The notes below the pieces were generated by a model. That model saw nothing but the letters and a program-made list of their open reading frames with translations. It ran no database searches and was not told where the DNA came from. The position numbers were made by a program, and so were the translations under genes. From positions 17,112,001-17,176,000 of the forward strand of contig NC_047069.1 in NCBI RefSeq assembly GCF_902459465.1: a stretch of DNA of 64,000 bases. Reading direction: 5' to 3'. Positions 2,990 to 57,990 of the stretch are shown in pieces. Position 1 is the first letter of the stretch. Each line of letters opens with the position of its first letter. This stretch comes from Asterias rubens. Taxonomy: Eukaryota.

Positions 2990-3960
2990 CTGATAAGAAA
3001 GTACCATTATCCAAGGATGAATGAGAATCTAGTGGGAAGGTTGCCATCATCTCCTCATCAAAACCCATCATTGCCTCCTTTATGGTTGACTCTTGCTTGA
3101 GCTCGAGAGAAACACTTTCCTTCTCCAACAGTGCGGAAATCTTTGCTTGTAGAGCAGTATTGGAACGTCTCGGGGCTCTTCTCTCGGCAGAAAGTTGATG
3201 TGCCTTTTGTTGCAGCTGCAACACTGACAGACTGCAGTTTGGAATCTTGGATGATGCAGTAATGATGACTCCTTCCTTCGCCTTCACTCGATACAACATG
3301 GCAGAAAGATCACTTTGATGACAGATGCATCGCATCGAGTGACAGATGGCCCGGTGAGTAGTAGTCTGCATCTAAGGTGCCGGATGGTTCCCTCTACCAA
3401 AGAATCTTGAGGTGTTATAAACATCGGCACCTGCCCATCGTTTCCCGTCTTTGATAGCACCAGCTCTTGGAAGTCACTATTCCCCTCACAAATGACCCCA
3501 CTTGATATCGAAGAGCAAAGCCGCTCACAGTCATCTTTCCTCGATATTTCTGGAACTTGAAGTGCGGGACAACTAGAATCATCCACCACAACACCTGCTA
3601 TTTTTAGCTTCCACGAGAAATCTGAAAACACACTCAGATACACAGCTACGTAACCCTCGGCCCGGTCGTCATAATCTGAAGAAAATCATTCCCGAACCAA
3701 GTCAGAAGCCTTGATCTCTGGGCTGCAGCCTCATAATCACTGAGCAAAGATTTTATAGATGGAGATTTTGCTCTGCAGCGGTCACATTCGGTCGATTCAA
3801 ACACTGCTACATCGATGTTGCATATGGCAAACCTGTTGTTCTTCTTACTAAAACTCTTCCACCACTGCCTCACCTTAACTTCACACAATTTGCAGATATA
3901 CGGAGGATAGATATCTGCATCTTCTACGAAGGCACTCTGAATGAAGAAGCATTCTTGAAC
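2990..3960 (-). pseudogene. N-terminal half of a RAG1-NTD-like/P-element transposase family member (paralog of 48386-52162)
   Basis: EDADIYPPYICKLCEVKVRQWWK, LSVFSDFSWKLKIAG, ICEGNSDF, TIRHLRCRLLL and ALQAKISALLEKESVSL align in order with THPPFLCHNCFKKLDLW, LSIFNDVSWRVDVCG, VCTGNGDY, TIRHRKCSLLV and ALQEKVRLMIEGDSITL of the 628-aa ORF. Confidence 0.8.
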
Positions 3961-5245
3961 CTGTCAGCACAAACAAATATTTGTTATTTTTATAATAGTA
4001 AATGATAGTTAATGTTTGATTTAAATTTGCACTTAATTTAGTAACAAAATCTTTATCTATTCCCAAACCCAAATTGGCCCATGCACAAGGGCTAACAACA
4101 CCAAGGAGAGCTTTAAAATTAGTTTAAAAAGCAGTGACTTCACGAGCGAGGGGTGAGGGAAATTAAATATGAACTTAATTAAAAAGAAAACGTAGAAATA
4201 AAACAGAATATTAATCTCGTAAAACTAAAAGTTGTACTAAATAGTGTCTATTAAAATTAAAAATTAAAATAATGGGTTTTTTTTGTAAGGCATAGTCAAT
4301 TGGTAGGGAGATGGGGAGGTCCAGACTGTGTAGAGAAATATTATAAATGCACACTGCACTGGTGAGGCACATAAACAAAAACAACCAAACTAAAATCGAA
4401 ATAATTCTTTAAAATCATACAAATTATTTTTAAAATGGTTGGACAAGCCCCCCAAAAAAACGAGTGGACATGAAAGACCTCTGAATCTGATAATCTTACC
4501 TATCCTACCCAAACTAAAAAACGAATAACACTAGGTTTATGAATTAAAATCCAAGTTAAAAAAGTAACATATCAAAAATATAAGTTCCCATATTAACAAC
4601 ATTAAAAGCGATAAATCGATGGTTAAAAAAAAAAATCCCATAACTTTTGTGTTAAAAAATCGTAAAGAGTTGAGCATCCTCATATCAGAAAGAACAAGGA
4701 CGTATGCTTCTAAAAATACCAATTTCCAACGCCGACGAACACCGGAACACCCTGAAAACCCATTTTTAATATTATCATAATATATAGTATTTCATACTTT
4801 ATCCAGAATTGTAATCATGTACTAACCTTGGTGGAAAAGGTCGAAAATTTTCGATCAAAACATTGTTGCAATCAGAATTTCACGCAGAATCGTTTGGAAA
4901 AGATGGCGCATAGAAAAGCGGCTTGTAAACACTACTGCGCATGTGAAAACTGGTTGTTTTTTGATTGTATGTGCAGATCATGTTTACTCCAGTATTGCTT
5001 GAACGATGACATATGCGTGTCCTGTGAACGAGATCGCGGCACTGGACACTGCACACAGAAGACGTTATCGCGGTCGTAAACCTGGTGAGCTCAGCCAGTG
5101 GCCCCATAGGTTTAGTGCAGGATAGCCAAAGGCGCTAATGGGATTAATTGGCTGTGGTTTTTCGTTCCAACTCCTTCTAATTCAACCTCCATGCTGTAAC
5201 TACCCGTTTTTCTTTTCCATTAAACTTGTGTAGAATATATACAAA

Positions 5246-36109: not shown

Positions 36110-37760
36110 ACAGGTTCCCTCAAAATGTTTCAAAATGGTTCCAGTGCAGGTTTCCGCAGGTGCGATGCTTTGAAGGTGTTCGATACATTCAGGCAGTCGA
36201 AAAATTTGTCAAAAAACTCAACAAATACAACTGATGCTACAACTGATGCTACAACTGATACTACAACTGATACTACAACTGATACTACAACTGATACTAC
36301 AACTGATACTACAACTGATACTACAACTGATACTACAACTGATACTACAACTGATACTACAACTGATACTACAACTGATACTACAACTGATGCTACAACT
36401 GATGCTACAACTGATGCTACAACTGATGCTACAACTGATGCTACAACTGATACTACAACTGATACTACAACTGATACTACAACTGATACTACAACTGATA
36501 CTACAACTGATACCATGGCTTTCTTGTTGAACTGTTGGTTAAAAAGAAGTATGTAATTACAATAACTGTATATTGCCTTAAATATAAAAGGTTTTTAAAA
36601 CACACAGTTGACAATAACATTTGAAAATAGCAATTGAATGTCACTTCACCGTTATTTTTCAAGTTTAAAAGATTGGAAGAAATGCAAAGTTTGACATCAA
36701 CAAGTTTGTGATCTTGTGAACCCAAAAAATTACAACAGGACTTACACAAAGGGTCTTGGTCTAACTGTGATATCCGGAGTTCTCCCAGTTGTTGCGAGTT
36801 GTCTTGACAAGATGAGGGACGTCGCAGATGAAGAAAACATGACGGTCAGGATCGCAAGGATTGGCAGTGAAGTACGTAGCCTCTGCGGTTGCTTCTGAAG
36901 AATGCAGTCGATAAAACTTCCGGTTCGGTGATGCGCCGTCGGAAACCAGGGCACGTACCTGAAAGCCGGCCAACTCAAGGAAAACAATGGCCTCCCACAT
37001 GCATGGATACAGTTGGTCACTGCTGACGCCTGTACTCGGGTAGTATCCAACTGGTGCATGGAGTGCACTGAAAATTCCTAGAACCATGAGGGTAAGCACA
37101 TGACTGGCCACTGCCGGCTCCGACTCCCCACGACATTTCCTTTCAAAATCGGCCACCTCATTTGCTAAACTTCCCACATCAGTAAACCGAAGTACCTTTC
37201 CCGACCTCACTGAAAAGGCCAGACCCGCCTTGACTTTCATCTCATCAAACAGCAATGAAACATTCCTCTCATGAACCGGGCAAGACAAAATATAGTTATC
37301 TTGCACAACCCTGTTGAGCATCGCTGCATTAAACCCGGTTGTTGGATCGGCAAAGTGGGTATATGGATGCAGTATGCTTGGATGAGGCAACTTCAAAAAC
37401 CCACTCTGCCGAAGAAGATTAAAGAAGTTGAAGATTTACTTTGAAGGGCAATGCACCAACGTATGATTGCTGGGTGCCAGCAGATCTGCTGGCCCTTCGC
37501 AATGGCTTCTTTTTGTTGTTCCCACAACAAATCAGCTGCTGACCCCTTCTCAATGGTGTTTCCGAGAACTTCTTCACACTCAGCAAAGGTTCACTTTAGT
37601 TGGTCATTCTGCTCGTCAGAGACACAAAACGCCTCTCTTGTCATCAGCTCCGAGACTTTCTCCTGAAGCAGAACCCCACGACACTTTAAATTTCTTTTTT
37701 CCTTCTGCAGGAGTTACACCTTTTCCTGCAGCTGTCTTGACGTCAGTCGGATATTTGGCG
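36110..37760 (-). pseudogene. P-element/THAP9-type transposase remnant (central and partial C-terminal)
   Basis: LLWEQQK, WHPAIIR, LFDEMKVK (D), LVSDGASPNRKFY (D), CDVPHLVKTTRNN, FFDCLN. Confidence 0.85.
36228..36513. repeat. 12-bp tandem repeat caactgat(a/g)cta, ~24 copies
   Basis: Direct reading; translates to (TTDT)n on + and (SVVV)n on -. Confidence 0.95.
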
Positions 37761-37868
37761 TGGAGGCAATGGAAACATCTTGCCTTTTCTTGGCGCGTTC
37801 TTGCGAAACCATCGACATCAAGTCACCGCGATGCACCATGCATATGTCGCATCTCACCTTCCCCTCGG

Positions 37869-38400
37869 TCATGAGCTGGCAATGCTGGTGTTGTATGACT
37901 CGCCAACAAGGTAGTTCACCTGCTGTGTAACCCCTTCACAGTGGACACCAAAAATGCCAAGTTTCCTTGGTGTCAGAAAGTAGACGGGGCCAGGCTGCAT
38001 GGGGTCCGATGGGTAATGCACTTGCTGTGCAAAGTCAAAAGAATAGTGCATAGCGATGCGTCTGCTACATGGGTCGTTTTGGCCAAGTCGAACTCCTTCT
38101 CGCTCTGCTGTTACCTTCGACTCTTTCACCAGATCCCAGTAGAAGGCCCTCTCCGTGGCCACATTGGTCAGATGATCCTGTTGTTTTCGACATCGCCCCT
38201 GCTTCTGGTCATCTGGAAGGTTGGCAGACTTGTAAACCAAGTTATTGTTTTTCTGACATTGCCAGCAAACATCCGACATTGGTTTGCAGCACACAATGAA
38301 GGGACAGACCACATTCCAGATCTTTCGAAATGTTGTCAGAGCAACCACCCTTGCATCATTCTTAAAGGTTGAGTTTGGCTGACACGTAAGTCGCTGATTT
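37869..38400 (-). pseudogene. Sola1-type transposase fragment
   Basis: KPMSDVCWQC, SFDFAQQVHYP, QPGPVYFLTPRK.GIFGV.CEG..QQVNYL. Confidence 0.75.
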
Positions 38401-41600: not shown

Positions 41601-42052
41601 GGGAAATAATGGTTCTTCTTCCATCAGAGGTGTAGCATCATTAACCCACATCTTCAACTTCTGTAGCATCTGATTAAGTGGTATATTTAGGTCAAGTATG
41701 CTGGAAGTACTTTCTGCCAAGCCCCAAAATGGACCAATAACAACTTTGTCCACCATGCCCAGTGCTCTAATTTGGGCAAGGTAGATCTTTTGCTGGACAT
41801 CAAACTGGACGGCTTTTAGGAGGTTGTTTGGGTCTGGCAACGTAGATATGAAGTCGCAAATATGGTGTCTGTGAAAGTAAGTGGCGGCGGCATCACCTAT
41901 GAAAAACTATAGACGGGCCACCATCGATATTCTTTTTCATCACATCGTACAAATCTTTGTTTTTGCTGTCAATGATGGAAAAATATGTGTCGTCGGACAA
42001 AGTCAGAAATAAGTAGCGCAGCGAAAGACCAGGTACAGATATGGCACACTTA
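41601..42052 (-). pseudogene. Repeat of the hAT-like/PolB chimeric junction
   Basis: 41601-41894 copies ~39212-39504; 41895-42052 is PolB again. Confidence 0.85.
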
Positions 42053-42346
42053 AGCCCTTTTCACACGACAAAGTCAAACTAGGGTCCTTGGTCTCAGGCG
42101 CCAGTTGTCTTGACCAAGGACGTTGGTCTCGCTCGAACACGACCTTTCACACGGCGCAGAAACCAACGTCCCGTGTCTCAGAGCCTTCGTCATTTGGGGT
42201 GTCAAAGGTCAACATTGTTTATGGTCCCTTTCGCTGGTATCCGCACATCTAGCATAACACATCACGAATGTATGCTGTTTACCAACTATTTTCCCGCGCT
42301 GTTTGTGCATCACTCTGTCACTGTTTTCCCACTCACTGGTGTTAAA

Positions 42347-44543
42347 ATGGCGAACCGTAATACCGACGTAGAATCTGTAATTTTTGGCGAGCTTTCGTCA
42401 AAGAAAACAAAACAAAAAAGAAACACCTGGACGTTCGATGAAACTGTCCGATTGATTGCAGTGGTAGGATCCACCGATGTCCAGGAAAAGTTGGACGGAC
42501 TTGTCCACAAAGACGTGGCAGGAGCGTTGGAGTCCAGGCACTCGGCCGAAAAGTGCCATGATAAATGGAACTGCCTCAAGAGGAAGTACCGAGAGGTCAA
42601 GAAAAAAAATAACAAGAGTGGACGGGGGAGACACACATTTATTTTCTTGAACGAAATGGATGACATTTTGGGTGAGTAAAGTATTGAAAAGTACCACCAA
42701 AAATCTACACGATGCTTGCAGTTGTACTGTAGTAGCTACGGAATTCCAAGAACTGAACGGAAACCAGTCGACTCGTCCCCCAGCAAAGTTGCACACTTTA
42801 AAGTCGCCCCAAACTAAGTCACCCCTTTATTGGGGTGGTAGTAATCAGGATGGTTATTTACTTTGTTTACTTGTTTTTTAAATTTAAAATAATAGATGTT
42901 TACACATTCTTAAATTGTTGAACTTTATATTATTTTTTGCTTTTACTATATCTTTTGGACAAATATTTTTATTTACTTTAGGGGGCGACTTTGCTGGGAG
43001 CGAGTTGACTGGCATCATCCAACTAAGCAATGTTAATATCATTAAAGTGTAACAATTTCATGCTGCAGATGGAAAGTCATGCACTAAGTTTAACTAACAG
43101 TAACAGTTTGCATAATTCAATATTTTTTAAATTATTTCGTTTAGGTCATCGTCCCATGATGGACAAGGCAAACCATGACCACCTGGACAGCGCCAGCCTC
43201 GCTGCAGCAGTTGCACCCATGGATTCAGACAGCGATAGAGACATCATCAGTGATATCGATGAAGCCTCTCCAGAAGAACTGGGAAGCGAATCCACACTGA
43301 CAGTGTCCACAAGTGAGTTTTAAGCCTTCCGCTTATATTTTTTGACACAAGCAAGTGGCCAAAAAAAGCTCTTCACTTTAAAAAAACAAAATATTGACCA
43401 GACCTTAAGAGCATTATTAGGTTCTAGACCTGAGCAACTAGTTAAGTTTACTATTCGACTGGTCGCGACTTTGACACTAGTCGCGACTAATTTTTAATTC
43501 CCAAGATATATTGCGGCATATTGTTTGCCGCAGGCCCAATAGTAAAATTCATGCTTAAAGGATTGAAGGATTGTGTCACTGATGTCTGTTTTTGTTTCGT
43601 TAGTAAATTATGTTGTCGTGAATAGTAGTAAGCGACACAATTGGTTCACCAAGCAGGTAGTCGCAACTTCTTTGGTAGTAGTTGTGGCGGCACAATTAAC
43701 TGAATAGTTGAAAAACAGTAGTTACGACTCGACTAAGCAATCAGTAGTCGCAACTTCGACACTATTCACCAAGGCTTATTAGGTACTGTACTATTTTGAA
43801 CAACACTATGTTTACTTTGTTTTGTCTTCCAGATTCTTCTTTTGATGGAAATAACGACACGACGGATGAAGTCCAGAGACCATCACAACCGCCAGCACCT
43901 GCTTCCCAGAAAGCCAAAAAGAAAAGTCCCTATGGTACAATTTATTTTCATGTTTTCATTCGCAATTTCAGATTCCTCTTTCAATTTTCTCATTAAAGAC
44001 AGTCCCTGCAAATGACTCGATTTTATCCGTTTGTAGTAAACTCAAAAAACCAAAGCAATTATTGAATGTTCTGATATTATTGAAATCTAGTCATAGTAAT
44101 AATAATACTCATAAATAGTGGCTTCTTATGTGATGTGGCACAATATCACAATATGTTGCCAAAGAAAACACAACAGTGTTCTTGAAAGCCAGTAATATTA
44201 TTCATTTTTGTTTATTTCCTGTACAGGAAAAGGAAAAATAAATCGTAGTGCGAGTGGTGCGCTCGAAAATGCCATGTCGTCCCTACATGAGCTGTATGAC
44301 AGAATGGAAACAAGAGATGAGAAGAATCTTCAGAAGATAGAGGAAAGAGAGGAGCAAAGACGAAGAGAAGATATTGATGTACAGGAGAAGCGAGATCGAT
44401 GGGAACATAAACAGGAGGAAAGACGAATCAAGGAGCATCGGGAATTTATGATGCAGATGATACAGATGATGCGTCAACCTGTGTACCCACCAAATTACCA
44501 ATCTCCTGATAACTGGAGTGGCCCATCGTTCACTATCCTGTGA
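42347..44543 (+). CDS. Harbinger Myb/SANT (trihelix/MADF-like) DNA-binding protein, 4 exons (42347-42671, 43145-43312, 43833-43934, 44227-44543)
   Basis: WTFDETVRLI...KC.DKWNCLKRKYR...F.FLNEMD.ILG|HRP; all GT-AG introns are phase 1 and keep the frame. Confidence 0.85.
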
Positions 44544-44989
44544 AATATCCTGATCCAGTAGCAAAACTTGCAATCCATAACAATTACTCAAACTAAATAA
44601 ATAACCAAAAAATCATTTGCAATGATGTTTTATTCTGTGAAACCAATTGTTGGAGGGTGGGAACACAACCAAATACAAGTTGAAAAAAAATCACAGGAAA
44701 TATCCCAAACTGTTTAAACTTACCAACTGAAAACATTTTTTGTAAATAAAAACCTTGCCTGGGAAGTAGTTCGATACTTTGTTCTTAAACACTTACATGC
44801 TATATAATTTCTTTACTTTTTATTCAACTCAAGTATTTATTCCTTTTAATTAAGCGCATTCTGTTCATATTATGTGATACTTTTGTCCATGTATCAAATT
44901 TCAAACTTGTAACTTGTTCTATTTGCCATGAACCCACCTTTGCAAAATGAACTTTGATTACAGTTCTCAGGTTATGTTTTTTTGTCCAT

Positions 44990-45750
44990 GAAGTAATTGC
45001 AATATTTGGGTAGTTCATTTTTTTATTTTTAAGTTTGAGTTCACTTTTAAGAAAACAAACTATGACAACTCTCATTTGACTTTCTCTTTGCCATGAATTT
45101 ATTATAATTTGAGTAGTTAAGTTCATTATTTCATTGATAGGTCTGTGTTAACTGTTACACTTTTAAGAAAATCAGACATTGAATGCGCTACTGTTCAGTA
45201 GTCCACTTTATTTTTGTTAAGTTATGGCATACACATCTATATGAAATATTTATTTGTAGAAGCAGCTGATAAATTAAAGTTAACTGTACACAAGGTTTAG
45301 TTTAATGTGTACATGTCGTACATGTCAACCCTGGCAACTTCAGAAAAGATCACCGCCATGTTTTTACTATTGCAGTATTATTTAATGTTCTCTTTGCCAT
45401 GATGTATTTGCAATATTTGGGTAGTGTAGTTCATTATTTTATTTTTAAAGTTGTGTTTACTTTGACACTTTTAAGAAAAACAAACAATGACAACTCTCAT
45501 TTTTTGTTCATTTTGCCATGATGTAAGTGCAATTTGAGTAGTTAAGTTCATTATTTCATAATTGGGTTTCTGTTATTACTTTTACCATTACACTTTTAAG
45601 AAAGACAAACATTGGATGTGCTACTTACTGTTCAGTAGTCCCCTTTGTTTTTGTTAAGTTATGGCATACACATTTATATGAAATATTTATTTGTAGAAGC
45701 AGCTGATAAATTAAAGTTAACTGTACACAGAATTAGTTCAATGTGTACAT
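44990..45750. repeat. Imperfect ~430-bp tandem duplication between the Harbinger genes
   Basis: Blocks gcaatatttgggtag, gacaactctcattt and ttgttaagttatggcatacacat...actgtacaca each occur twice. Confidence 0.75.
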
Positions 45751-46168
45751 GTATCTATACATACTTTTTAAATAATTTTTAAATAATTCTTCAGTTTTTT
45801 TATTTTTTGGTTCACATACATTACCTGTACATTTACATGAACTTGGTTATCAATAATTTGTACATGTATTTTTTTATCATAATGTACTATCAAAAAAGCT
45901 GTTTTGCAGGGAGTTATATTTCTATTAAAGTTTGATTTGAAAAGGTATTTGGAAATGTCTGGTTTATTTTACTTCATACTTATGTCCCTCTTTAAACATT
46001 AACAATGACAGTACATGTACATAAATGTGAAAACACCTATCATGAGATTTGAATAGTGAAAACAATTGCAATTCAATATACAATGTATAATAGTAAATTA
46101 GGTCTTACATGTACATTGTACACTGTAGTAAGTTTGGTCAAAAATACAGAAGGTGTGGGCAACCTTAA

Positions 46169-46204
46169 AGGCACTGGACACTATTGGTAATTGTCAAAGT
46201 GCCT
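46169..46204. mobile_element. 36-bp miniature TTAA-flanked element (Kolobok-like MITE remnant)
   Basis: ttaa|aggcact...agtgcct|ttaa: 7-bp TIR plus TTAA duplication. Confidence 0.65.
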
Positions 46205-46232
46205 TTAACAGTGGTATGATGGTACTTGCAAA

Positions 46233-48103
46233 TTATTTACTGATAAATTTGCAAAGGGCATTACGAATTGTGGACGCTTCTTTATGAATACAATGTCGCT
46301 GGTCATTAGTAGCAACAGTTGGTTGGGCAAATTCTTCCTCCTCTTCCCAGTGTGCTGAATAAGTCTCACGCCATGTCTCACAAAAGTTGTGGAGAGCCAC
46401 GCAAGCACCTACAATGTGGGGGATATTCAAAATGTCGCTTTCATTTTTTTTCAGGAGGCATCTCCATCTGTTTTTCAGACGGCCAAAGGCATTCTCGACA
46501 ACCATTCTACTTCGGCTGTGTATGTAGTTGTATCGTTTCTGTTCTTCAGTAAGGTTCCCGTATGGATAAGGCTTCATAAGATAAGTTTCCTCACCATACG
46601 CAGAGTCCCCAAGAATCAGAACGGGAACATCAACCCCTTCAATCGACCTGGTACTAGTGGGGAAAAAAGTACCTGCCATGAGTTTGTCCTTCAAAGATGA
46701 CTGCTCAAACACCCATGCATCATGGCACTTTCCGGGCCATCCAATGTCGAAGTCCAAAAACTTGTACTTGTAATCTACAAGTCCTTGCAGGACAACACTA
46801 TACCAACCCTTACGATTGTGGTAGTCAGTACAGTATGCGCTGGGTGAGGTAATCCGTATATGGCTGCCGTCTATTGCGCCACCACATTGGGGAAATCCCC
46901 ACTTTTGCTCAAATCCGTCCATGATCTTTCTTGTGTCTGCTGCAGAGGGTGCCTTTACATACAGCGGTATTAACACCTTGCAAATTGCTCGACAAACCTC
47001 AAGATAAATGGTGCAGACTGTGGATATACCGACCCCAAACAAGTTCGATATTGCTCCAAGATCGGCATTTTTGGCAAGTCGGAACAGTGTTATAGCGACT
47101 CTCTTCTCCACACTTATGGCCTTGCGCATGTTTGTGTTTTTCTTTGCGATGTGGTCACGTAGTTGGAGGCACAAGAGGCTGAACGTATCCCGAGTCATTC
47201 GAAATGATTCATAAAATCTTCCATCATCGAATGTGTCCATCATGTCCAGCTTCCAGAAATCTGTTTGACGTGGAAGGGACCAAGTGGTTCTTCCAAAACT
47301 TTGATGTACTTCTGTATTTAATAAAAACAAACAAAATTTTTGTTGTCAGTCAAAGAAGGTTTGTTGAGTTTGAAGTACAGAATATACCAATTGTTAAATA
47401 AACTTGTCTCATAATCTATTTGAATGTTCTGCTTGTTTAATTGCGAGCTCGCTGTATCATGTATATGTAGCAACACTACATAGTACATGTCAGGTTTAAG
47501 CCAAAAATCTGACATTTTTTCCACTTGAATTTGTCATAATTTATTTACACTCACGATCTGCATCTTGCATGACTTCATCTGTCCCTGGGGTCCCCATAGG
47601 GCATAGTACATATAGGCCCCTACTAAACAAGATTTAATTTGTTTAACTTTTAATTATTTTTAATTTATCATGTTTATGAAGAAGAATTGTATTGTAATTT
47701 GTGGTCCTGCCTGATGCTGGAAACTCTCCGTATCGTGCCCTCTTTTTTTACCTCATTTTTACAAAAAGGAACACCTCTATTGACAAAAAATCAATACTAA
47801 TTGATTTAATAACGAATGAAAAAGTGTGACAGTACGGAAACATTTCCTTGTTGTAACTGGGGAGTTGAAATTCTTACCGCTGAACGTTGTCATCATGAGT
47901 AACGCTGAATGAACGATCGTTTTGGCACATTTCCTTTGCTTCAACAGAAGTCTTCGACGGTAGAACATTGCCTGCTTTCTATAGCGTTGGTTTATGCCTC
48001 CAATTGCTCTTCGTGCGTTGTCATGGTTGTTGTTTTGACGTTTTTTACTCAAAAAACTTAGGAATGAAAGCATCATTAACGTTAGCTGTTCGATCGCCGC
48101 CAT
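46233..48103 (-). CDS. Harbinger (HARBI1-like, DDE_Tnp_4) transposase, 2 exons (48103-47878; 47311-46233), apparently intact
   Basis: F...FRMTR.TF, GAIDGSHI (D), LGDSAY (D), VVENAFGRLKNRW (E); the phase-1 intron G|gtaaga...tacag|AA restores the frame. Confidence 0.92.
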
Positions 48104-48385
48104 CTTGGTTGTCGTGTGGGTTTTTTGTGCGCATGCGTGGTAGCTCCAGCTACACCAGGGTCCTTCGTTACGCAAGCAATGTTCATTCACACAGCACGCA
48201 CGGACGATCGTGGTATAATTTACACAACGTTGTGTTTTTAAGACGGAGGTCTCGACCATGGTCTTAAAAGGACCAGGGACCCGTGCCTATTTAAGCAGAG
48301 GTACATTTCACACGATGTGGATTAAACAACGTTGTGTTCTTAGGACCAAGGACCCCCTGCTTATTTTGCTCGTGTGAAAAGGGCT

Positions 48386-51300
48386 TTTGTCACCTTCTGT
48401 GTTTTTTTGACAATTTCCACGTTTGGAGGCTTTGGTGCATGATCTTGAAACATGAAAAGCCATCATGTTATGGCCAAACTGTTCAGCAGTGGGATTGTCA
48501 CTGGTCCCTCCTGCCGATCTCTGCTTTGAAAAGTACATCTCGAGTGGATCTTGATTGAAGCGATCGCTTAGCAAATACTCCACTCCCGGAATTCGCAGAA
48601 GGACTTTACCCAATTTTGTGAAGGAATTCACTGAAACTAAAAGAAACGTTGATGATATGTTAAAACAAACTAGATTCAGGTCCATTGGTTCCAAATCAGC
48701 TATCTGAATTGTAGGTTGCTGCTGTGAACAATTCATGTATACAATTTTATCTTCAAGTATGCTCTCATCCTCCAATCAGATTTGTGGAAATACAAACAAA
48801 TATATAGCATCTGCGTCCCATATCCAACTCGCCTCAGTGTTGTGAACAATATTATACTGGATTCTTTGAGTCTCCAAAAAAAATTGTCTTGTTGCTTCTT
48901 TGTGTTTCTCAAAGTTCCCCGGTTAATTTAATTTTAAGATTTGTAACTTTGTGCTAGACATACATGAACATGAACCGCAATAAAAATAAAAATGCAATAA
49001 ATAATTACCAGTAATTCGCAATCCTTCAAGTGTCTCTCTGCTTATGCACATCCTCTGCTTCACTTCCTTTGTTACGTTTTCCAGGCTCTCAGATTCCTTT
49101 TCCCAGCTATCAAGAAAGTCCAAGAAGTCATCTTGAAGCCACTGGTTAAAAAAAGATAACATTAGGCCTATAATATTTTTATAAAATCATCAAATGGGTG
49201 GTTTTATCTGTGGGGTGGGTTTCAGGGGACATTCTTTGTTACAGGATGGCTTTGTAGAGGTGCTGGTCACATGTTCCTCCTCACCACTCACTGGCTTGGT
49301 ATTTTTAGCTATTTTGCTTCTTTGTTTCTTTATGGATCGATTTATATATTTACATTTTTATGCCAGTGTTGAGTCTAATAAAACTAAACTTAACTTGTCG
49401 GTGCAGAATGGGGGGGGGGGGGGGGGGGGGAGGATGCTCTACATATACTTTGCAGTAAGAAACCACACACTTAAAATCAGTTGAAAATTTAACTTCTTTT
49501 CCGTTTGGGGGGGGGGGGGTAAAACCTTAAATGTGACTGAAATTACCTTGAAACGCCAATCATCTACGCTTGTATATGGAGCAAGAGCTGGTTTGAGTTT
49601 GTGTGCTGACTTGTGGGGATTTCCAACGTTCAAACAGTCAAAAAAACTGGTCAAACTTTGAGACAAACAGCTGAGTTGAAGAAGTATCATGACAGCCAAA
49701 TGCCTTAAAAGCATTAGCAACAGTAATGCTCAGAACCTGAAAATAATGTGATACATTATAAAAATTGTTACGTCTGCCAAAATTCATAACTAAAAGGTAG
49801 GTTCCTTTGCCTTCATCGATCCTGGCTCTGCTCTACATTTTACAATGTCAATGCTTAGATGACAGTTGGTGTTTGTTATTCATTAACATTTATAAAACAA
49901 CAATGTACTTGTGTGGCCATATAGACTCGCATCCTCAAAGTTGGGGTTAGATGCAGATGTTCATACGTGATCTTGTATAGTCGTCGGAGGCCTGGAGAAG
50001 ATCTGTTCTTCCCGATGTCCCAGTCATACAACATCAGCAAATGTGTCCACTTAATATCTTGCTTCTGAAACTAACATGAGAAAAACATATGGGTCACATG
50101 TGAGCTTTACATTGACTAATTACATACAAGTGTACGGCGTAACACACAGTGTTTCTTGTAACAAATTATCAATTGTCGGTCAAGGATGCAAAAAGGGTTT
50201 TTGTTTTTCCATTGAATATTGTTACATTTTCTATTAACAGTTAAAGTTTTCTGCAATTTAAAATAGTGTAAAATTTTAGCAGTTGTAAAATATTTCAACA
50301 CTAAACAGTTGTATCAACAAACTTGCATGCAAGTTTCTGGTCATGTTGTTAAAGCCTGAATTCTCCCAGTTGTTTCTTGTTGTCTTCATGAGATGAGGGG
50401 CATCACAAAAGAAGAAAAGGTCTCGCTCTGCTGCAGGATGGCTCACTGAATGTGTGAAGGAGTTCCGGGGTCCATGGATCCTGTAGAATTTCCTGTTGGC
50501 CGATGCCCCATCTGATGCCAGTGACCTCACGATAAACCCCACTGCCTCCAGAAGATTAATAGCCTCCCAAATGCAGGGGTACAGCTGATGGCTAGAAATG
50601 CCAAGGCTAGGGTAGTACCCAATTGGTGAACGCAACGAAGTAAATATACCCCGAATCATCAGAACCAACACATGACTAGCAATTGGAACCTTCCCTCCTT
50701 TACATTTTACCTCAAACTGGAGGATTTCATTGGCAATTGAGCCCACATCAACAAAACCAACAACAGCGCCGGAACGAACTGAATAAACCAATCCCGCTTT
50801 TATTTTCATCTCATCGAACATGATTGTGATGTTACGCTCATGTTCTGGAAGTGAATAGAGATTGATGTCCTCAACAATCCTCAAAACCAGATCTGAATTA
50901 AAACCTGCAGTCGGCTCACCAAAATGAGTGTAAGGGTGAAGGGTGTTGGGATGAGGCAGCTTGAGAAAGCCGCTTTCACGAAGAAGGTCGTAGGTAGCCG
51001 ATGACTTGCTCTGCAGAGCAAGGCAGAATCTTATGATGGCTGGGTGCCACCTCATCCCTTTGCCCTTCTGGAAAGACTTCTTCTGCTGTTCCCAAAGCAA
51101 CGCTGCATAGGAGTGCTCAGGGACAGCAGACATGAAGGCAGATTCCTCCTGCTCCATTGCTTGATGAACCAGAGTGCTAGTACCGACAGGCAAAGTGATG
51201 CTGTCACCTTCGATCATCAGGCGTACCTTTTCCTGGAGGGCTCCACTCCTTCTCTTCAGAGATTGAATCTCAGCTTTCATCAACTTCATCTTTCTTTGCA

Positions 51301-52162
51301 GGTTGCTGTTTGATAGGACATCATTTCGCACTGTTGATGATGTGAGAACTGCAGCCGGGACATTACTAAGTCTTGAAGACAAGACACTGAGATCTACCCT
51401 CAGAAGTTGGCATAAATCGCATTTCATCTTCGGTTTGGATACCAGCAAAGAGCACTTTCTATGCCTGATGGTCCGATATGGGTGAATTTGGAATGTATCC
51501 CTGCCAGTAATGGTAACTGGGATTTGACCAGCCGAACCTTCCTTCGATTTTACTAAAAGCGGATAGTCACCGTTTCCCGTGCAAACGTCATTCTCGCAGA
51601 TTATTCTTACCACACCTTCAACATCTGCATACCCTAATGATGCCGGAACATCCACAAACAAAGAACAACCTGAACCTGTTACATCGAATCCACACACATC
51701 AACCCTCCAAGAAACATCATTGAATATACTCAACTCCACTTCAGGGTAGCCACTCTCCCCGAACTTCATGACTTTCAACCTGTCGGGACCACGCCATGTC
51801 ATGCACCCATGTTGACTGGCCAATTCGATGACCCTGTTGCAAATTGAAGAGAGATCATCAAGTGAGAGATGGACAACAGCACAGCCTTGTGAACACTCAT
51901 GTTCAAAAAAGGTAGCAACCTTGATGTTGCATGAAGTTTGCTTTTGGAGTTTTAAAGCTTTATGCCACAGGTCTAGCTTCTTGAAGCAGTTATGGCAGAG
52001 AAATGGGGGATGGGTGCCAAGGACATCCTGACTGACATCCAAATCCAAGGCCTGAAGTATAACATCTCTATACTTTTCTTTATTGTGGGGTTTTCTCCTA
52101 TGCAGACCAGCGGCTCCCTTCTCTCCACATAGCCTGCAAACATCCCGTAGACATTCAGCCAT
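48386..52162 (-). CDS. P-element/THAP9-type transposase with a RAG1-N-terminal-like zinc domain; 5 exons (52162-~50330, 50070-49909, 49736-49547, 49141-49009, 48630-~48386); 1-nt frameshift in a T7 run at 49640-49646
   Basis: N-terminus CRLCG...DVSQDVLGTHPPFLCHNC. Catalytic FDEMKIK, SDGASAN and QDPLE. Splicing gives RNLH|FQKQDIKW, MATQ|VLS, RFK|WLQ and RIT(V)NSF. The 3' end is cut by the Harbinger TIR. Confidence 0.85.
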
Positions 52163-53149
52163 GGTTCAGACCATCACAACTTCTTCCTTGCAGACCATAG
52201 AGTCCTTTCTCTATGTTAAAAAAAGCTGAATATTGGAAAAAGCAAAATTGAAAACTATAAATACAAATGAGATGAGATAAAAATAGATGATAAACAATTT
52301 GGAAAATTCTGACATAAGCAATATTTACTTGAAAGGGAGCCCTACCACTTCCAGAAAATTGAAGATAATAATACTAATTAATTCAATTATTAATTAAGAA
52401 TTAAAAATTAACGATTAATTAAATTATAAACAAGGATAGGTCCTTGAAGTAAGTGGCTGCAGTTTCTACACTTGTGGTTACTTGGCTCAGTTAAATAAAA
52501 ATAAAAAAATGTTACAAAAAATTTAAACCAAGGTGTTGTTGAATCATGATGACAAACGAACATCAACTCTATGCCTATTTTTTTTTTACATCATGTAAAT
52601 GATACAACGAATTAAAAATCCAGGTAGCCTATATAGCATGCATGACAAACTGTGTGTTTAAAAAGCCTTCCAAGGCGTTTTCATGCAGTATAATTTCTGA
52701 AGATTCTATTTTATCTGTCAATTTTATTTTCATATTAACATAATATTTTTTGCTAAACACCACCCCTGTTTTCATACCGAAACATCAAGCGACCCAGTTT
52801 GTGTGTGCACAGCCCGGTCGGCTGAATATTTTGTGCGCATGTGTAACCTGCCTAGTAATAGGAAGTCAAATTGTAACACAATGGGAATGGCAAAAATGGC
52901 TCTTGAAAAACTCATGAGTTACATCTCCAAACAATGGAATGGTAATAAGGGTAGCGCCAAAAAAGAAAAATTTAAATTAGTAGGCGTGGAGGGAGGTGCA
53001 GGGTACCTTATCCTTCCCCCTACACAGTAATCTATACCATTAAATGTTACAGGTAACATTATCTTTGGCCATGATTCAAAGCATAGAATAAGCAATAAAC
53101 AGTTTCACAAACCGCAAATTCCTCAAGTGGTTTTGGTACTTTTCACGAC

Positions 53150-54309: not shown

Positions 54310-55360
54310 TAAACAGCTTCGTCCTTGTAGAGACATACATCTTCTTGGTTTAGATGGGTCGAGCGATATACTTTACGAAGAAAGAAAAAAAATTCAAAAT
54401 TTCCTTTAACTTCTGTTCCTATCCTCATCAGGAATCAAAGCAAGGAAATTGTCAACCTTGGTCTGGTTAAACAGGTCACGAGCAAAGTTGCCTGGCATCA
54501 TTAACTTGGGCACTAACCCAATCGTCTCCATTAAGTGATCGTTAAACTTCTTCTCTGCATCATCAAACATGGGTTTGAAGTCTCGAGTGGTGTCCCAGCT
54601 TTGGAAGCAGGCAATTTCACATATTATGACTTTCTTGAAGAAATTACCCAAATTGATGTCGGCATGGGTTGCATCCAGGAGCTTGTGTTTGGGGTGAGAC
54701 CTAAGAACTGGGTAAGACTGTACACCCCTGGCAACTTCTGACAGCTCAGCAGCTGAAACATTTTCAGGGTTGACCTGGAGGTATTGGGCAGTGGCTTTTG
54801 TTTCTTCATAGCTTCGTGAAATGCAGAAAGTGCCCAACTAGCTCTTCGCCGTCTCCTTTCTTCTATGTTGTAGAGTGCAGACGTACCTTGATCCACTCCC
54901 CTGTAAACTAAACTGCCCTCTGCCCGGTCCAGCTTCTCGTCGATCATGCTATTGAAGAACTTCTGCTTATGTTTCCTCCATACAGAATAAATATTCACTG
55001 AAAGCTCTTTTCCGTAAAGCACCTCCTGATCATGCTCCATGCCTTCAAGTAGTACAACAGCAGACGATCTGTTGTTCTCATCCCCTATTGCCTCAATGAG
55101 GGGCCGAGTTATGAAAGTGGAATCAGGTTTATCGGGCTCATACACCGTTACTCTCTCCCCATCCTTCTCCACCTCCCACTTGATGATCGCAAAGGCTGCC
55201 CAGAAGGCCTTGTCTGGCAATAGACGATCCCTCGCTGTCTTGATGATGGAAACAACTCCCATTCCATGTGCCCCGTCCTTCACAGTTGTGAGGATACAGT
55301 GATCTTCTTCAGGGTTCAGTCCTGCCTTGTTCATGCCCTCAATATTAAGTACACTGGGCT
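54310..55360 (-). pseudogene. RAG1L: RAG1-like (RAG1L) transposase core fragment, decayed
   Basis: IEGM...TTVKDGAHGMGVVS (RAG1 ILEGM...VVVKESCDGMGDVS), PDKAF, VYEPDKP.S, IGDENN, MIDEKL, GSRYVCTL (other frame), LDATHADIN, PKLMMPGNFARDLF, LIPDE, LKEILNFF..LRKVYRS. Frameshifts; the region with the third catalytic residue is missing. Confidence 0.85.
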
Positions 55361-57062: not shown

Positions 57063-57689
57063 TTAATTATAAAATACCATGTTATGAAACAAAGAAGTAT
57101 GTACATAAAAGTGTGTAGCCAGACGCTGCTCAGATATTATGTCTGTGTCCAGTAAGAGGTATCCGTCACTGTTTCCTGGTACCATTTCTATGCTTCTGCT
57201 GATATCAGATACACTTATTCTGTATACATCACAAGTTTATTTTACTAGCGTTATTGTGTTGTGTACAACAAAAACAATTACCCTTTATTTCTATCCATTA
57301 AAAAGAATGTTACTATCAATGAAACATACTTGTACCCAAAAGTTTCCATGTCAAGTTCATACCTCCCAAGTAAGCCTTGCAACAATGTGTTGTCCAATCC
57401 TGGCTACCATCAACAATGAGTACAGCTCCTGTCTTCCTCTTTCTTGTTAATTCTCTGAAAATCAGAAGAAGGTAGTTCACATGTTCTTGGATGGTCATCT
57501 TGTAAAACTTTGATGACCATGGTCACATTAGATGGTTCCAGTTCTGGGGATGAAGAAATGGGGATATCCAATTCATCTTTCACACTCTTTGGGGCGTCAT
57601 CCTTTCTGGTCAGTTCCATGTAACCACATGGGGTGACAAGATAAGCCTGATCCTTGAGGGAAATCATGACCGGGACATATAGGCGAGTC

Positions 57690-57990
57690 GTTCAGCTGTC
57701 TTAATCAGATGGGGAACATCCGAGAAGAAGAAAACATGCCGTGAATAATCGACCGTACTGAGTACACAGTAGACATCCTTACTCTTGTCGTCCTCTTCAC
57801 GGCACATACGGTAAAACTTTCTGTTCTGCGATGCACCGTCAGAGACCATCGCTCGTACAACAAACCCTGCTGACTCCAACATAATAACAGCATCAAGAAG
57901 CAATAGATAGAGCTGATGACTAGTTACTCCAATAGTCGGATAATAGCCAACAGTTTCTTGTGGTCGGCTGAGGCAGGAAACTACTGGCGG
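57690..57990 (-). pseudogene. P-element-type transposase fragment (fourth piece)
   Basis: VGYYPTIGVTSHQLY, LESAGFVVRAMVSDGASQNRKFY, FFSDVPHLIKT. Confidence 0.8.

What the first reader, a model, noticed from the sequence alone, without database searches (positions are those of the whole stretch)
48386..52162. P-element-type transposase with a RAG1-N-terminal-like zinc domain instead of THAP, nearly intact
The N-terminus CRLCG-(~30 aa)-ILQALDLDVSQDVLGTHPPFLCHNC matches the RAG1 N-terminal pattern CRICG...[25 protein letters not shown] (RAG1 recalled from memory). The C-terminal two-thirds is a full P/THAP9 core with D, D and E intact across four clean introns. Canonical P transposases use a THAP domain, while this zinc module is known from RAG1, Chapaev and N-RAG-TP. 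Its presence on a P core shows the module shuffling between superfamilies and bears on how RAG1 got its N-terminus. Only a 1-nt homopolymer slip and the Harbinger-cut tail disable it. I cannot exclude that the family is already catalogued.
Basis: partly seen in the sequence, partly recalled or inferred. Interest (0 to 1): 0.85.

Follow-up and report, generated by a model that had tools for sequence, protein, structure and literature searches.

The report
P transposase with RAG1-like zinc domain
This is a broken starfish copy of a P-element-type jumping gene whose enzyme begins with the two-zinc domain that heads the immune recombinase RAG1 rather than the usual THAP domain; the family is widespread, looks recently mobile in other animals, and is not described in the papers I could search.

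Summary
On the minus strand at 48387-52162 lies Asterias rubens LOC117293214, a five-exon P/THAP9-type transposase gene. D450, D551, the C/D-x2-H motif and the catalytic E are present. A 7-T run in exon 3 shifts the frame, and a 6.3-kb Harbinger cuts the 3' tail at 48386.

A profile of the family's N-termini hits the solved mouse RAG1 N-terminal zinc domain (NZD, PDB 21WB) at E 9e-10, against 5e-4 for ZAD. It retrieves true sea-urchin RAG1-like proteins from 1.8 billion sequences (E 1e-14). It aligns to RAG1L NZDs with 99.5% hhalign probability. Both AlphaFold models hit all eight Swiss-Prot RAG1s first. All eight zinc ligands are conserved in the family; this copy has a variant second site.

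NZD-bearing cores form one well-supported clade of the P superfamily, found in all five echinoderm classes, amphioxus and hydrozoans. Patiria and Clytia carry near-identical copies with 29-35-bp TIRs and 7-bp TSDs. Published work says only RAG1/RAG1L and Chapaev carry this domain.

The local copy is a single-copy fossil. Exaptation is not excluded, and NZD function is inferred, not shown.

The parts
50327..52162 (-). Exon 1, 612 codons and uninterrupted. Holds the NZD-like domain, a conserved middle region, a coiled coil, the HTH and RNase H N-half.
   Evidence: ORF. Maps to P0009 aa 65-665. Ends ...TRNLH before a GCAAGT donor.
51872..52162 (-). NZD/Chapa-like zinc domain, aa 1-97. ZFa ligands are C9, C12, C56 and C59. 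The variant ZFb candidates are C4, H88, C90 and C94.
   Evidence: Pfam on the isolated domain gives RAG1_imp_bd 2e-5 (above the gathering score) and zf-AD 1.9e-5 (below it). The profile hits 21WB at 8.9e-10. The AF2 model has pLDDT 83.5 and its top 8 Foldseek hits are RAG1.
50936..51091 (-). P-element-type HTH domain, aa 358-409.
   Evidence: Pfam Tnp_P_element at E 1e-3. Aligned to 6P5A.
50477..50908 (-). RNase H-like catalytic domain, N-terminal half, aa 419-562. Contains D450 (50813-50815) and D551 (50510-50512). The C586-D587-x-x-H589 motif follows.
   Evidence: Pfam TNP-like_RNaseH_N at 4.3e-24. Alignment to the P element FDEMKV and SDlgtgN motifs.
50071..50326 (-). Intron 1, GC-AG.
   Evidence: The RefSeq model P0001 joins ...NLH to FQKQ.
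49909..50070 (-). Exon 2, 54 codons; start of the GTP-binding insertion domain region.
   Evidence: 69-78% identical to P0009 and P0007. P0001 carries PF21788.
49737..49908 (-). Intron 2, GT-AG.
   Evidence: An RNA contig of run X15 skips 172 nt here.
49547..49736 (-). Exon 3, 190 nt. The reading frame shifts inside it.
   Evidence: Two tblastn pieces in different frames meet at 49641-49645. Translations.
49640..49646 (-). Homopolymer run (7 A on the plus strand, 7 T on the coding strand) where the frame shifts by one base.
   Evidence: X3 contig 49598-50909 covers it with 0 gaps. The RefSeq protein ends ...FDQFF here.
49142..49546 (-). Intron 3, GT-AG. Contains a high-copy short repeat around 49202-49307.
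   Evidence: Read depth of hundreds to thousands.
49009..49141 (-). Exon 4, 133 nt.
   Evidence: 50-55% identical to P0009 and P0007..
48631..49008 (-). Intron 4, GT-AG. Contains a high-copy repeat around 48746-48831.
   Evidence: Spliced RNA reads of run X23 join 49009 to 48630..
48387..48630 (-). Exon 5, RNase H C-terminal half with the catalytic E (48539-48541, in NQDPLEMYF). Truncated about 12 codons before the family's normal end.
   Evidence: Pfam TNP-like_RNaseH_C at 7.9e-10. Maps to P0009 aa 826-910 of 922.
42052..48386 (.). Harbinger/PIF element inserted into exon 5. Not part of the P-type gene, but it is the lesion that cuts the gene's tail.
   Evidence: Perfect 17-bp TIRs at 42052-42068 and 48370-48386. 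DDE_Tnp_4 at 3.9e-33 and Myb_DNA-bind_4 at 1.4e-12. X12 and X15 contigs diverge from the window at exactly 48386.

Best explanation
The locus is an immobile, decaying copy of a DNA transposon of the P superfamily. It belongs to a distinct clade, here called NZD-P. In this clade the transposase carries an N-terminal two-zinc NZD/Chapa-type domain, homologous to the N-terminal zinc domain of RAG1/RAG1L, in the position where canonical P and THAP9 transposases carry THAP.

**Intact relatives.** These encode an 860-930-aa protein with this order of parts: NZD, a conserved middle region, a coiled coil, an HTH, and an RNase H-like DDE domain split by the GTP-binding insertion domain. They sit in 9-10-kb elements with 29-35-bp TIRs and 7-bp target-site duplications. 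These elements also carry a convergent second gene.

**Mechanism.** The elements presumably move by P-type cut-and-paste. The NZD most likely takes the role THAP has in P elements, namely recognising DNA at or near the element ends. Its basic helix after the second CxxC may also serve nuclear import. This step is inferred from position and analogy, not shown.

**The A. rubens copy.** It keeps the DDE residues but cannot make full-length transposase. A one-base frame shift in exon 3 and a Harbinger insertion in exon 5 break it. It has no recognisable ends, and the companion gene is missing.
For: **P core**
- Pfam hits RNaseH_N at 4e-24, the HTH, and RNaseH_C at 8e-10.
- PDB 6P5A scores 1e-6 for this copy. 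The intact Patiria relative P0007 scores 2.2e-15, with the FDEMKV, SDxxxxN, DxPHLxK and NQDxxExFF motifs aligned.

**NZD homology**
- The family profile hits PDB 21WB at 8.9e-10, against 5e-4 for ZAD.
- Pfam RAG1_imp_bd matches 14 of 16 members, best 2e-11.
- The profile retrieves RAG1 core-bearing proteins from 1.84e9 sequences: P0077 (Diadema setosum RAG1-like) at 1.3e-14, P0130 and P0087.
- hhalign gives 99.5% probability and E 2.8e-22.
- Ligand columns are conserved in 74-85 of 85 domains. 72 of 124 domains show the RAG1-type one-N-plus-three-C ZFb pattern.
- Foldseek finds all eight Swiss-Prot RAG1s first: E 1e-6 to 1e-4 and TM 0.53-0.65 for the P0014 model, E 2e-3 to 2e-2 for the A. rubens model. 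ZAD structures cover only residues 11-78, the ZFa part.

**Clade.** All 29 NZD-bearing cores fall in one clade with SH-aLRT 99. THAP-bearing cores fall in another with support 100.

**Mobility in relatives**
- Patiria copies L003 and L004 are 97-98.6% identical over about 9 kb on different chromosomes. They have a 35-bp TIR starting CATGG and a 7-bp TSD.
- Clytia copies L005 and L006 are 99-99.7% identical. They have a 29-bp perfect TIR and two different 7-bp TSDs.

**Fossil state here**
- Frame shift and Harbinger insertion.
- Three further decayed family fragments lie in the same window, one with an NZD remnant at E 3e-14.
Against: - No TIRs or TSD could be found for this copy, so its transposon nature rests on its relatives.
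- The gene body has single-copy read depth and is spliced and transcribed in relatives.
- Listed coding differences to close relatives are 8 synonymous to 6 non-synonymous. Both indels of a 2.3-kb RNA contig fall in the intron. This hints at constraint that a dead transposon copy should not show.
- This copy lacks the N-terminal His ligand and has H-x-C-x3-C instead of H-x3-C-x2-C. The recently active Patiria transposase lacks ZFb ligands altogether. So the second zinc site is not essential to the family.
- DNA binding by any NZD has not been demonstrated.
Confidence: 0.72

Rival explanations
1. The locus is, or until recently was, an exapted host gene derived from an NZD-P transposase. A fixed single-copy gene is kept by selection in the Asterias lineage. 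It may act through the N-terminal part (NZD, HTH and half an RNase H domain) as a DNA-binding regulator or repressor, in the way truncated P-element products repress transposition. On this view the frame shift and the Harbinger insertion are recent or haplotype-specific lesions.
For: - Read depth over the gene body is single-copy.
- Contigs of relatives 2-3% diverged are collinear through exons, introns and the 5' flank, and lack the Harbinger insertion.
- Spliced RNA joints are seen in two runs.
- Listed coding differences are 8 synonymous to 6 non-synonymous.
- Contig 13 of X15 has both of its indels in intron 1 and none in about 2 kb of exon.
- The 612-codon exon 1 is intact, whereas later exons are damaged.
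- In Patiria, the nearest relative P0003 is an intact 614-aa single-exon ORF with no downstream exons.
Against: - No shared neighbours were found with the Patiria P0003 locus within the window.
- The surroundings are a transposon graveyard.
- The reference copy is broken, and X3 confirms the frame shift.
- The difference counts come from a truncated table of 14 sites.
- Echinoderm heterozygosity could make the 'relatives' mere haplotypes.
- Sister lineages are plainly mobile.
Confidence: 0.2
2. The N-terminal domain is just a ZAD-type single-zinc domain (zf-AD). On this view the resemblance to RAG1 reflects the shared ZFa scaffold only, and nothing specific links it to RAG1 or Chapaev.
For: - Pfam zf-AD matches 16 of 16 members, best 7e-8, and scores about the same as RAG1_imp_bd on this single copy.
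- The best solved-structure matches are ZAD domains, with Z 5-6 and Foldseek E 0.5.
- This copy and Patiria P0007 have degenerate ZFb ligands.
Against: - The family profile prefers RAG1 NZD over ZAD by five to six orders of magnitude. The alignment runs through the ZFb ligands H102, C210 and C213.
- The ZFb His, His, Cys, Cys columns are conserved in 74-83 of 85 domains.
- Domains without the C-terminal His more often have a Cys at position -5: 8 of 17 against 8 of 84.
- ZAD structures align only to residues 11-78, while RAG1 models align over 2-120.
- hhalign against RAG1L gives 99.5%.
- No C2H2 array follows the domain.
Confidence: 0.05
3. The architecture is an artefact: a chimeric gene model or assembly that joins an unrelated zinc-finger exon to a P-type pseudogene.
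For: None specific. The region is rich in transposon debris, and a RAG1-like core fossil lies 2.2 kb upstream.
Against: - The zinc domain and the RNase H N-half lie in one uninterrupted exon.
- An RNA contig of another run covers 49910-52223 in one piece.
- The same architecture recurs in dozens of proteins from echinoderms, amphioxus and hydrozoans.
Confidence: 0.02

Closest known systems
Drosophila P element transposase and vertebrate THAP9 / Pdre (P superfamily)
   Same: - RNase H-like DDE domain interrupted by the GTP-binding insertion domain.
- The HTH before it and the [C/D]x2H signature.
- Coiled coil upstream of the HTH.
- TIRs plus a 7-bp TSD in mobile relatives, within the 7-8 bp I recall for the superfamily (own knowledge, not checked here).
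- Introns within the transposase gene.
   Different: - No THAP domain; an NZD/Chapa-type two-zinc domain sits at the N-terminus.
- Relatives are 9-10-kb two-gene elements with a convergent ORF2.
- The cores form a clade separate from THAP-bearing cores.
RAG1 / RAG1-like N-terminal zinc domain (NZD; PDB 21WB; Pfam PF12560 region)
   Same: - Same ligand pattern: H-x7-CxxC ... CxxC ... H-x3/4-CxxC.
- 25-31% identity to sea-urchin RAG1L NZDs, nearly gapless.
- Predicted helices correspond to H1, H3 and H4. H2 is absent, as reported for invertebrate RAG1L and Chapa domains (preprint 10.64898/2026.01.24.700457).
   Different: - Attached to a P-type core, not a Transib/RAG1 core.
- No RING/ZDD follows.
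- Function in either context is unknown.
Chapa domain of Chapaev transposases (CMC superfamily)
   Same: - An N-terminal NZD-like domain on a DDE transposase.
[quoted passage not shown]
- An extra C-terminal helix is predicted.
   Different: - Different transposase superfamily.
- I could not compare directly, because no Chapaev sequence was available from the tools.
ZAD (zf-AD) domain of arthropod and vertebrate C2H2 zinc-finger proteins
   Same: The ZFa module (C4 zinc site plus two helices) superposes with Z 5-6 over residues 11-78.
   Different: - ZAD has one zinc and dimerises.
- ZAD precedes C2H2 arrays.
- Here an interlocked second site is conserved, and the partner is a transposase.
N-RAG-TP of Aplysia (Panchin and Moroz 2008, as cited in PMC8355894)
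   Same: A mobile element with a RAG1 N-terminal-like sequence that lies outside RAG1.
   Different: - It is described as having no RAG1/Transib core.
- Its relation to P-type cores was not stated in the text I could read, and it was not tested here.

Membership tests
P superfamily transposase (P element / THAP9) | RNase H-like DDE catalytic domain with family-specific sequence | tested here: met
   PF21787 at 4.3e-24 and PF21789 at 7.9e-10. 6P5A at 1e-6. D450, D551 and E aligned to D230, D303 and E531.
P superfamily transposase (P element / THAP9) | GTP-binding insertion domain splitting the RNase H fold | tested here: met
   PF21788 is precomputed on the RefSeq product P0001 and on relatives. 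Exons 2-4 align to that region of P0009 and P0007. In this copy the frame shift lies inside it.
P superfamily transposase (P element / THAP9) | [C/D]x2H signature after the second D, and an HTH upstream | tested here: met
   CDAPH at aa 586-590. Tnp_P_element HTH at 1e-3.
P superfamily transposase (P element / THAP9) | N-terminal THAP zinc domain (C2CH, AVPTIF) | tested here: not met
   No THAP hit with Pfam at E up to 1. A THAP profile built from THAP-bearing relatives hits none of the NZD-bearing proteins.
P superfamily transposase (P element / THAP9) | Element with TIRs and 7-8-bp TSD | tested here: inconclusive
   Not found for this copy. Met in relatives: Patiria L004 8629-17780, with a 35-bp TIR and a 7-bp TSD, and Clytia L005/L006, with a 29-bp TIR and 7-bp TSDs.
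RAG1 NZD / Chapa-type zinc domain | ZFa: four Cys as two CxxC pairs | tested here: met
   C9, C12, C56 and C59. These columns are conserved in 83-85 of 85 domains.
RAG1 NZD / Chapa-type zinc domain | ZFb: N-terminal His plus C-terminal His-Cys-Cys interlocked with ZFa | tested here: inconclusive
   In the family: His 74/85, His 74/85, Cys 82/85 and Cys 83/85. In this copy the N-terminal His position is the start Met, and the C-terminal part reads H88-x-C90-x3-C94. C4 is a possible substitute ligand.
RAG1 NZD / Chapa-type zinc domain | Significant sequence similarity to RAG1/RAG1L NZD | tested here: met
   21WB at 8.9e-10. RAG1L proteins retrieved at about 1e-14 to 6e-12. hhalign 99.5%. This copy alone scores PF12560 24.8 bits against a gathering score of 23.3, and 21WB at E 0.047.
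RAG1 NZD / Chapa-type zinc domain | NZD fold (H1, H3, H4 plus two zinc modules) | tested here: met
   AF2 models have pLDDT 83.5 and 86.9. The top eight Foldseek hits in Swiss-Prot AFDB are RAG1 with probability 1.0, and TM by query is 0.47-0.65. Both sides of the comparison are predictions.
RAG1 NZD / Chapa-type zinc domain | Two zinc ions per domain | not testable with these tools
   Needs ICP or NMR on recombinant protein.
ZAD (zf-AD) | Single C4 zinc site, dimerisation, N-terminal to C2H2 arrays; Pfam PF07776 above the gathering score | tested here: not met
   PF07776 scores 21-25 bits against a gathering score of 28. No C2H2 array follows. A second ligand set is conserved. Dimerisation is not testable.

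The most novel reading that the evidence does not exclude
NZD-P elements are an undescribed, still-mobile, two-gene lineage of P-type transposons reaching from cnidarians to deuterostomes. In this lineage the RAG1-type NZD is the element-end (or chromatin) targeting module.

The same module also sits on RAG1L, on Chapaev and on Crypton-type (DUF3504) proteins. On this reading the NZD is a promiscuous transposon head domain, and RAG1 took its N-terminus from that pool.

Near-identical Patiria and Clytia copies with intact ORFs and known ends would then give the first tractable system for finding out what the NZD does. The convergent companion gene, PHD-bearing in sea stars, would echo the RAG1/RAG2 arrangement.
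Probability: 0.35. Interest if true: 0.85.

Novelty: new variant of a known kind. Interest (0 to 1): 0.7.

Why it matters
**The open question.** The origin and function of the non-core N-terminus of RAG1 are unresolved.
- The 2026 NMR preprint of the RAG1 NZD (10.64898/2026.01.24.700457) states that Chapaev is the only lineage besides RAG1/RAG1L that consistently keeps such a domain. It describes other hits as sporadic and not a coherent group.

**What this finding changes.** A large, coherent clade of P-superfamily transposases carries the domain, and at least one Crypton-type protein does too. So the module is portable among unrelated recombinase classes.

**Why that is useful.** Because near-identical copies with intact ORFs and defined TIRs exist, the NZD's role becomes directly testable outside the RAG system. 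Candidate roles are DNA-end binding, nuclear import and chromatin targeting. Echinoderm genomes hold RAG1L and NZD-P side by side, which is the right setting to ask who donated the domain to whom.

**Limits.**
- The proteins are already in public databases under uninformative names: 'uncharacterized', 'THAP9', 'ZAD domain-containing'. Some carry precomputed PF12560 hits, so the novelty is one of recognition.
- Repbase could not be checked.

Tried and rejected
- **Inverted repeats around the gene.** Only chance-level pairs turned up; there are no TIRs for this copy.
- **Patiria TIR start searched in the window.** No match.
- **Sequence that relatives carry beyond 48386.** It was not found in the window. 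The DNA below the Harbinger's other end is therefore not the gene's original tail, and the 3' end cannot be reconstructed from this window.
- **Synteny with the Patiria P0003 locus.** Nothing is shared except the gene. This is inconclusive, because the A. rubens flanks are all transposons.
- **Foldseek and VIA-align against solved structures.** They returned only ZAD domains over the ZFa part. 21WB did not appear and is probably not in that structural library, so the structural link to RAG1 rests on AFDB models.
- **Comparing exon and intron substitution rates.** Abandoned, because the table shows only 40 of 261 differences.
- **ORF2 of the related elements.** Pfam found weak PHD hits only, the Atlas found nothing, and sequence homologs are all unnamed.
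- **Literature searches for a P-type transposase with a Chapa/NZD domain.** None found.
- **Idea that the upstream RAG1-like fossil supplied the zinc exon.** Rejected. The architecture is ancient and shared across phyla, and the fossil's own N-terminus would lie on the far side.


Full report
**What is there**

The window comes from Asterias rubens. The 628-aa ORF at 50276-52162 (minus strand) is 100% identical to RefSeq LOC117293214. I mapped the full-length relatives P0009 (Acanthaster, 922 aa) and P0007 (Patiria, 864 aa) onto the window and checked the splice sites. This gives five exons:
- exon 1: 52162-50327
- exon 2: 50070-49909
- exon 3: 49736-49547
- exon 4: 49141-49009
- exon 5: 48630-48387

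Intron 1 is GC-AG; the other three are GT-AG. RNA data from close relatives show the exon 2/3 joint (run X15) and the exon 4/5 joint (run X23).

Two lesions break the gene.
- A run of seven T at 49646-49640 shifts the frame between ...FDQFF and DCLNV.... A contig of an independent run (X3) spans this place without a gap. The RefSeq protein stops there.
- A 6.3-kb Harbinger element at 42052-48386 cuts exon 5 about 12 codons before the normal end. It has perfect 17-bp TIRs, DDE_Tnp_4 at 3.9e-33 and a Myb-like ORF. Contigs of relatives 2-3% diverged (X12, X15) leave the window at exactly 48386, so the insertion is absent there.

**The core is P-type**

Pfam finds TNP-like_RNaseH_N (4.3e-24), the P-element HTH and TNP-like_RNaseH_C (7.9e-10). 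The Drosophila P transposase structure 6P5A is the only strong PDB sequence match: 1e-6 for this copy and 2.2e-15 for the intact Patiria relative.

The motifs FDEMK (D450), SDGAS (D551), CDAPH and NQDPLEMYF align to the P element residues D230, D303, the D339 motif and E531. The catalytic roles of those residues are documented in PMC8230255. No THAP domain is detectable.

**The N-terminus is an NZD/Chapa-type domain**

The solved mouse RAG1 NZD has two zinc modules (preprint 10.64898/2026.01.24.700457):
- ZFa: C110, C113, C175, C178
- ZFb: H102, H206, C210, C213

The evidence that the family's N-terminus is the same kind of domain runs as follows.
- **Profile against PDB.** A profile of 16 family N-termini (alignment A1) hits that structure's sequence (21WB) at 8.9e-10. 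It hits full-length RAG1 at 2.7e-5, aligned from residue 101 to 218 through H102, C110, C113, C175, C178, C210 and C213. The best ZAD scores 5e-4.
- **Pfam.** RAG1_imp_bd matches 14 of 16 members (best 2e-11). zf-AD matches 16 of 16 (best 7e-8) but stays under its gathering score on this copy.
- **Search of 1.84 billion representatives.** The profile finds 1619 proteins at E up to 1e-3. Among the long hits, 18 have a P core. Three are true RAG1-like proteins with the RAG1 recombinase domain (PF12940 at 4.5e-70 and 3e-78), including Diadema setosum 'V(D)J recombination-activating protein 1-like'.
- **Profile against profile.** Comparison with these RAG1L NZDs gives 99.5% probability and E 2.8e-22 over 102 columns.
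- **Ligand conservation.** In 85 aligned domains the eight ligand columns are conserved in 74 to 85 sequences. The commonest pattern (72 of 124 domains) is H-x7-CxxC...CxxC...H-x3/4-CxxC, the type I scheme of RAG1. Domains lacking the C-terminal His more often carry a Cys five residues before the first CxxC (8 of 17 against 8 of 84). That is the kind of ligand exchange described for type II Chapa domains (preprint).
- **Structure models.** The A. rubens model has pLDDT 83.5 and the Apostichopus model 86.9. Both put all eight Swiss-Prot RAG1 entries first. For the Apostichopus model E is 1e-6 to 1e-4, TM is 0.53-0.65, and residues 2-120 align to RAG1 about 99-237. ZAD proteins follow at E of about 0.2 or worse.
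- **Solved structures.** ZAD domains match only residues 11-78, the ZFa part. That is the relation the preprint describes between ZAD and NZD.
- **Predicted helices.** They correspond to H1, H3 and H4 plus a C-terminal helix, without H2, as reported for invertebrate RAG1L and Chapa domains.

This A. rubens copy itself is atypical. The N-terminal His position is occupied by the start Met, and the C-terminal part reads H-x-C-x3-C, with C4 as a possible substitute ligand.

**A coherent clade, mobile elsewhere**

A search with the core alone finds relatives in all five echinoderm classes, amphioxus, hemichordates, hydrozoans, molluscs and others.

In a maximum-likelihood tree of 118 cores:
- All 29 NZD-bearing proteins fall in one clade (51 rows, SH-aLRT 99). 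It includes echinoderm, Branchiostoma, Clytia and Hydractinia sequences (names).
- The THAP-bearing proteins fall in a separate clade (support 100).
- A third clade has other N-termini.
- The tree is unrooted, so the direction of the domain exchange is open.

Two species carry near-identical copies.
- **Patiria miniata.** Copies on different chromosomes are 97-98.6% identical over about 9 kb. L004 8629-17780 has a 35-bp TIR (34 of 35 positions match) beginning CATGG and a 7-bp TSD.
- **Clytia hemisphaerica.** Two copies are 99-99.7% identical. They have 29-bp perfect TIRs and different 7-bp TSDs.

Both elements carry a convergent second gene whose roughly 340-aa domain is conserved from Clytia to sea stars (34% identity, E 2e-30). 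In sea stars it starts with a PHD-like finger.

**The local copy**

No TIRs could be found. The DNA beyond the Harbinger is not the original tail. The companion gene is absent.

The same window holds three more decayed fragments of the family:
- 3012-3963, which includes an NZD remnant at E 3e-14
- 36133-37926
- 57616-57951

A RAG1-like core fossil lies 2.2 kb upstream (PF12940 at 8e-11). The setting is a transposon graveyard, and the simplest reading is a fossil copy.

Some data pull the other way:
- Read depth is single-copy, and the locus is collinear in close relatives.
- Transcripts are spliced.
- The listed coding differences are 8 synonymous to 6 non-synonymous.
- Indels are confined to the intron.
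- The nearest Patiria relative is an intact exon-1-only ORF.

I therefore keep an exapted-gene reading at about 0.2.

**Known or new**

Only two papers in the searchable library mention the Chapa domain.
- The 2026 preprint says Chapaev is the only other lineage that consistently keeps it, and that other hits do not form a coherent group.

I found no paper describing it on a P-type core. Public annotations call these proteins 'uncharacterized', 'THAP9', 'P transposase' or 'ZAD domain-containing'. Some carry precomputed PF12560 hits. I could not search Repbase.

**Shown and inferred**

Shown:
- the gene model and its lesions
- the P-type core with its catalytic residues
- homology of the N-domain to the RAG1/RAG1L NZD
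- a single clade of NZD-bearing cores
- TIRs, TSDs and near-identical copies in two other species

Inferred:
- that the NZD replaces THAP functionally as the element-end binding domain
- that the elements are currently active
- that the domain moved between superfamilies rather than being ancestral to several

Noticed in passing
window 54406-55334 (-): RAG1-like recombinase core fossil. Pfam PF12940 hits two overlapping ORFs at 8e-11 and 3e-7. It lies 2.2 kb upstream of the NZD-P gene on the same strand. Adjacency looks coincidental, but RAG1L and NZD-P remains lie side by side.
   Followed up: partly
window 3012-3963 (-), 36133-37926 (-), 57616-57951 (-): Three more decayed fragments of the same P-type family. 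The first keeps the second half of an NZD (E 3e-14). The second is 66% identical to the Patiria and Acanthaster subfamily.
   Followed up: partly
L004 15435-17628 (-); L001 16337-18954 (-); L006 16171-17199 (-): The mobile NZD-P elements carry a convergent second gene. It has a conserved, unnamed domain of about 340 aa (Patiria vs Acanthaster 52%, vs Clytia 34%). In sea stars a PHD-like finger exon precedes it; in Clytia a C2H2-like motif does. Function is unknown. The arrangement loosely recalls the convergent RAG1L/RAG2L pair.
   Followed up: partly
proteins P0135, P0026, P0033, P0035, P0043, P0140 (one search hits): The NZD profile also hits other architectures. One is a Branchiostoma protein with DUF3504 and QRICH1 domains (Crypton-type). 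Another is a Branchiostoma protein with three tandem NZD-like domains. Several 780-1040-aa proteins have unidentified cores, possibly Chapaev.
   Followed up: partly
window 42052-48386: Complete-looking Harbinger/PIF element with 17-bp perfect TIRs, a DDE_Tnp_4 ORF (46233-47330, -) and a Myb-like ORF (42110-42679, +). It is absent at this site in contigs of runs X12 and X15, so the insertion is young or polymorphic.
   Followed up: yes
window 48746-48831 and 49202-49307: Short segments inside introns 4 and 3 have read depth in the hundreds to thousands, with many loose ends. They are probably high-copy MITE- or SINE-like repeats.
   Followed up: no
window 51817-51970: In run X3 one contig of high depth (241) joins 51817 to 51970, skipping 152 nt inside exon 1 with non-canonical ends. 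It may be a deleted paralogous copy or an assembly effect.
   Followed up: no
L002 10001-11845: Patiria LOC119725265, the closest named relative of this copy (61% identical), is an intact 614-aa ORF equal to exon 1 only. No downstream exons were detectable within 10 kb.
   Followed up: partly
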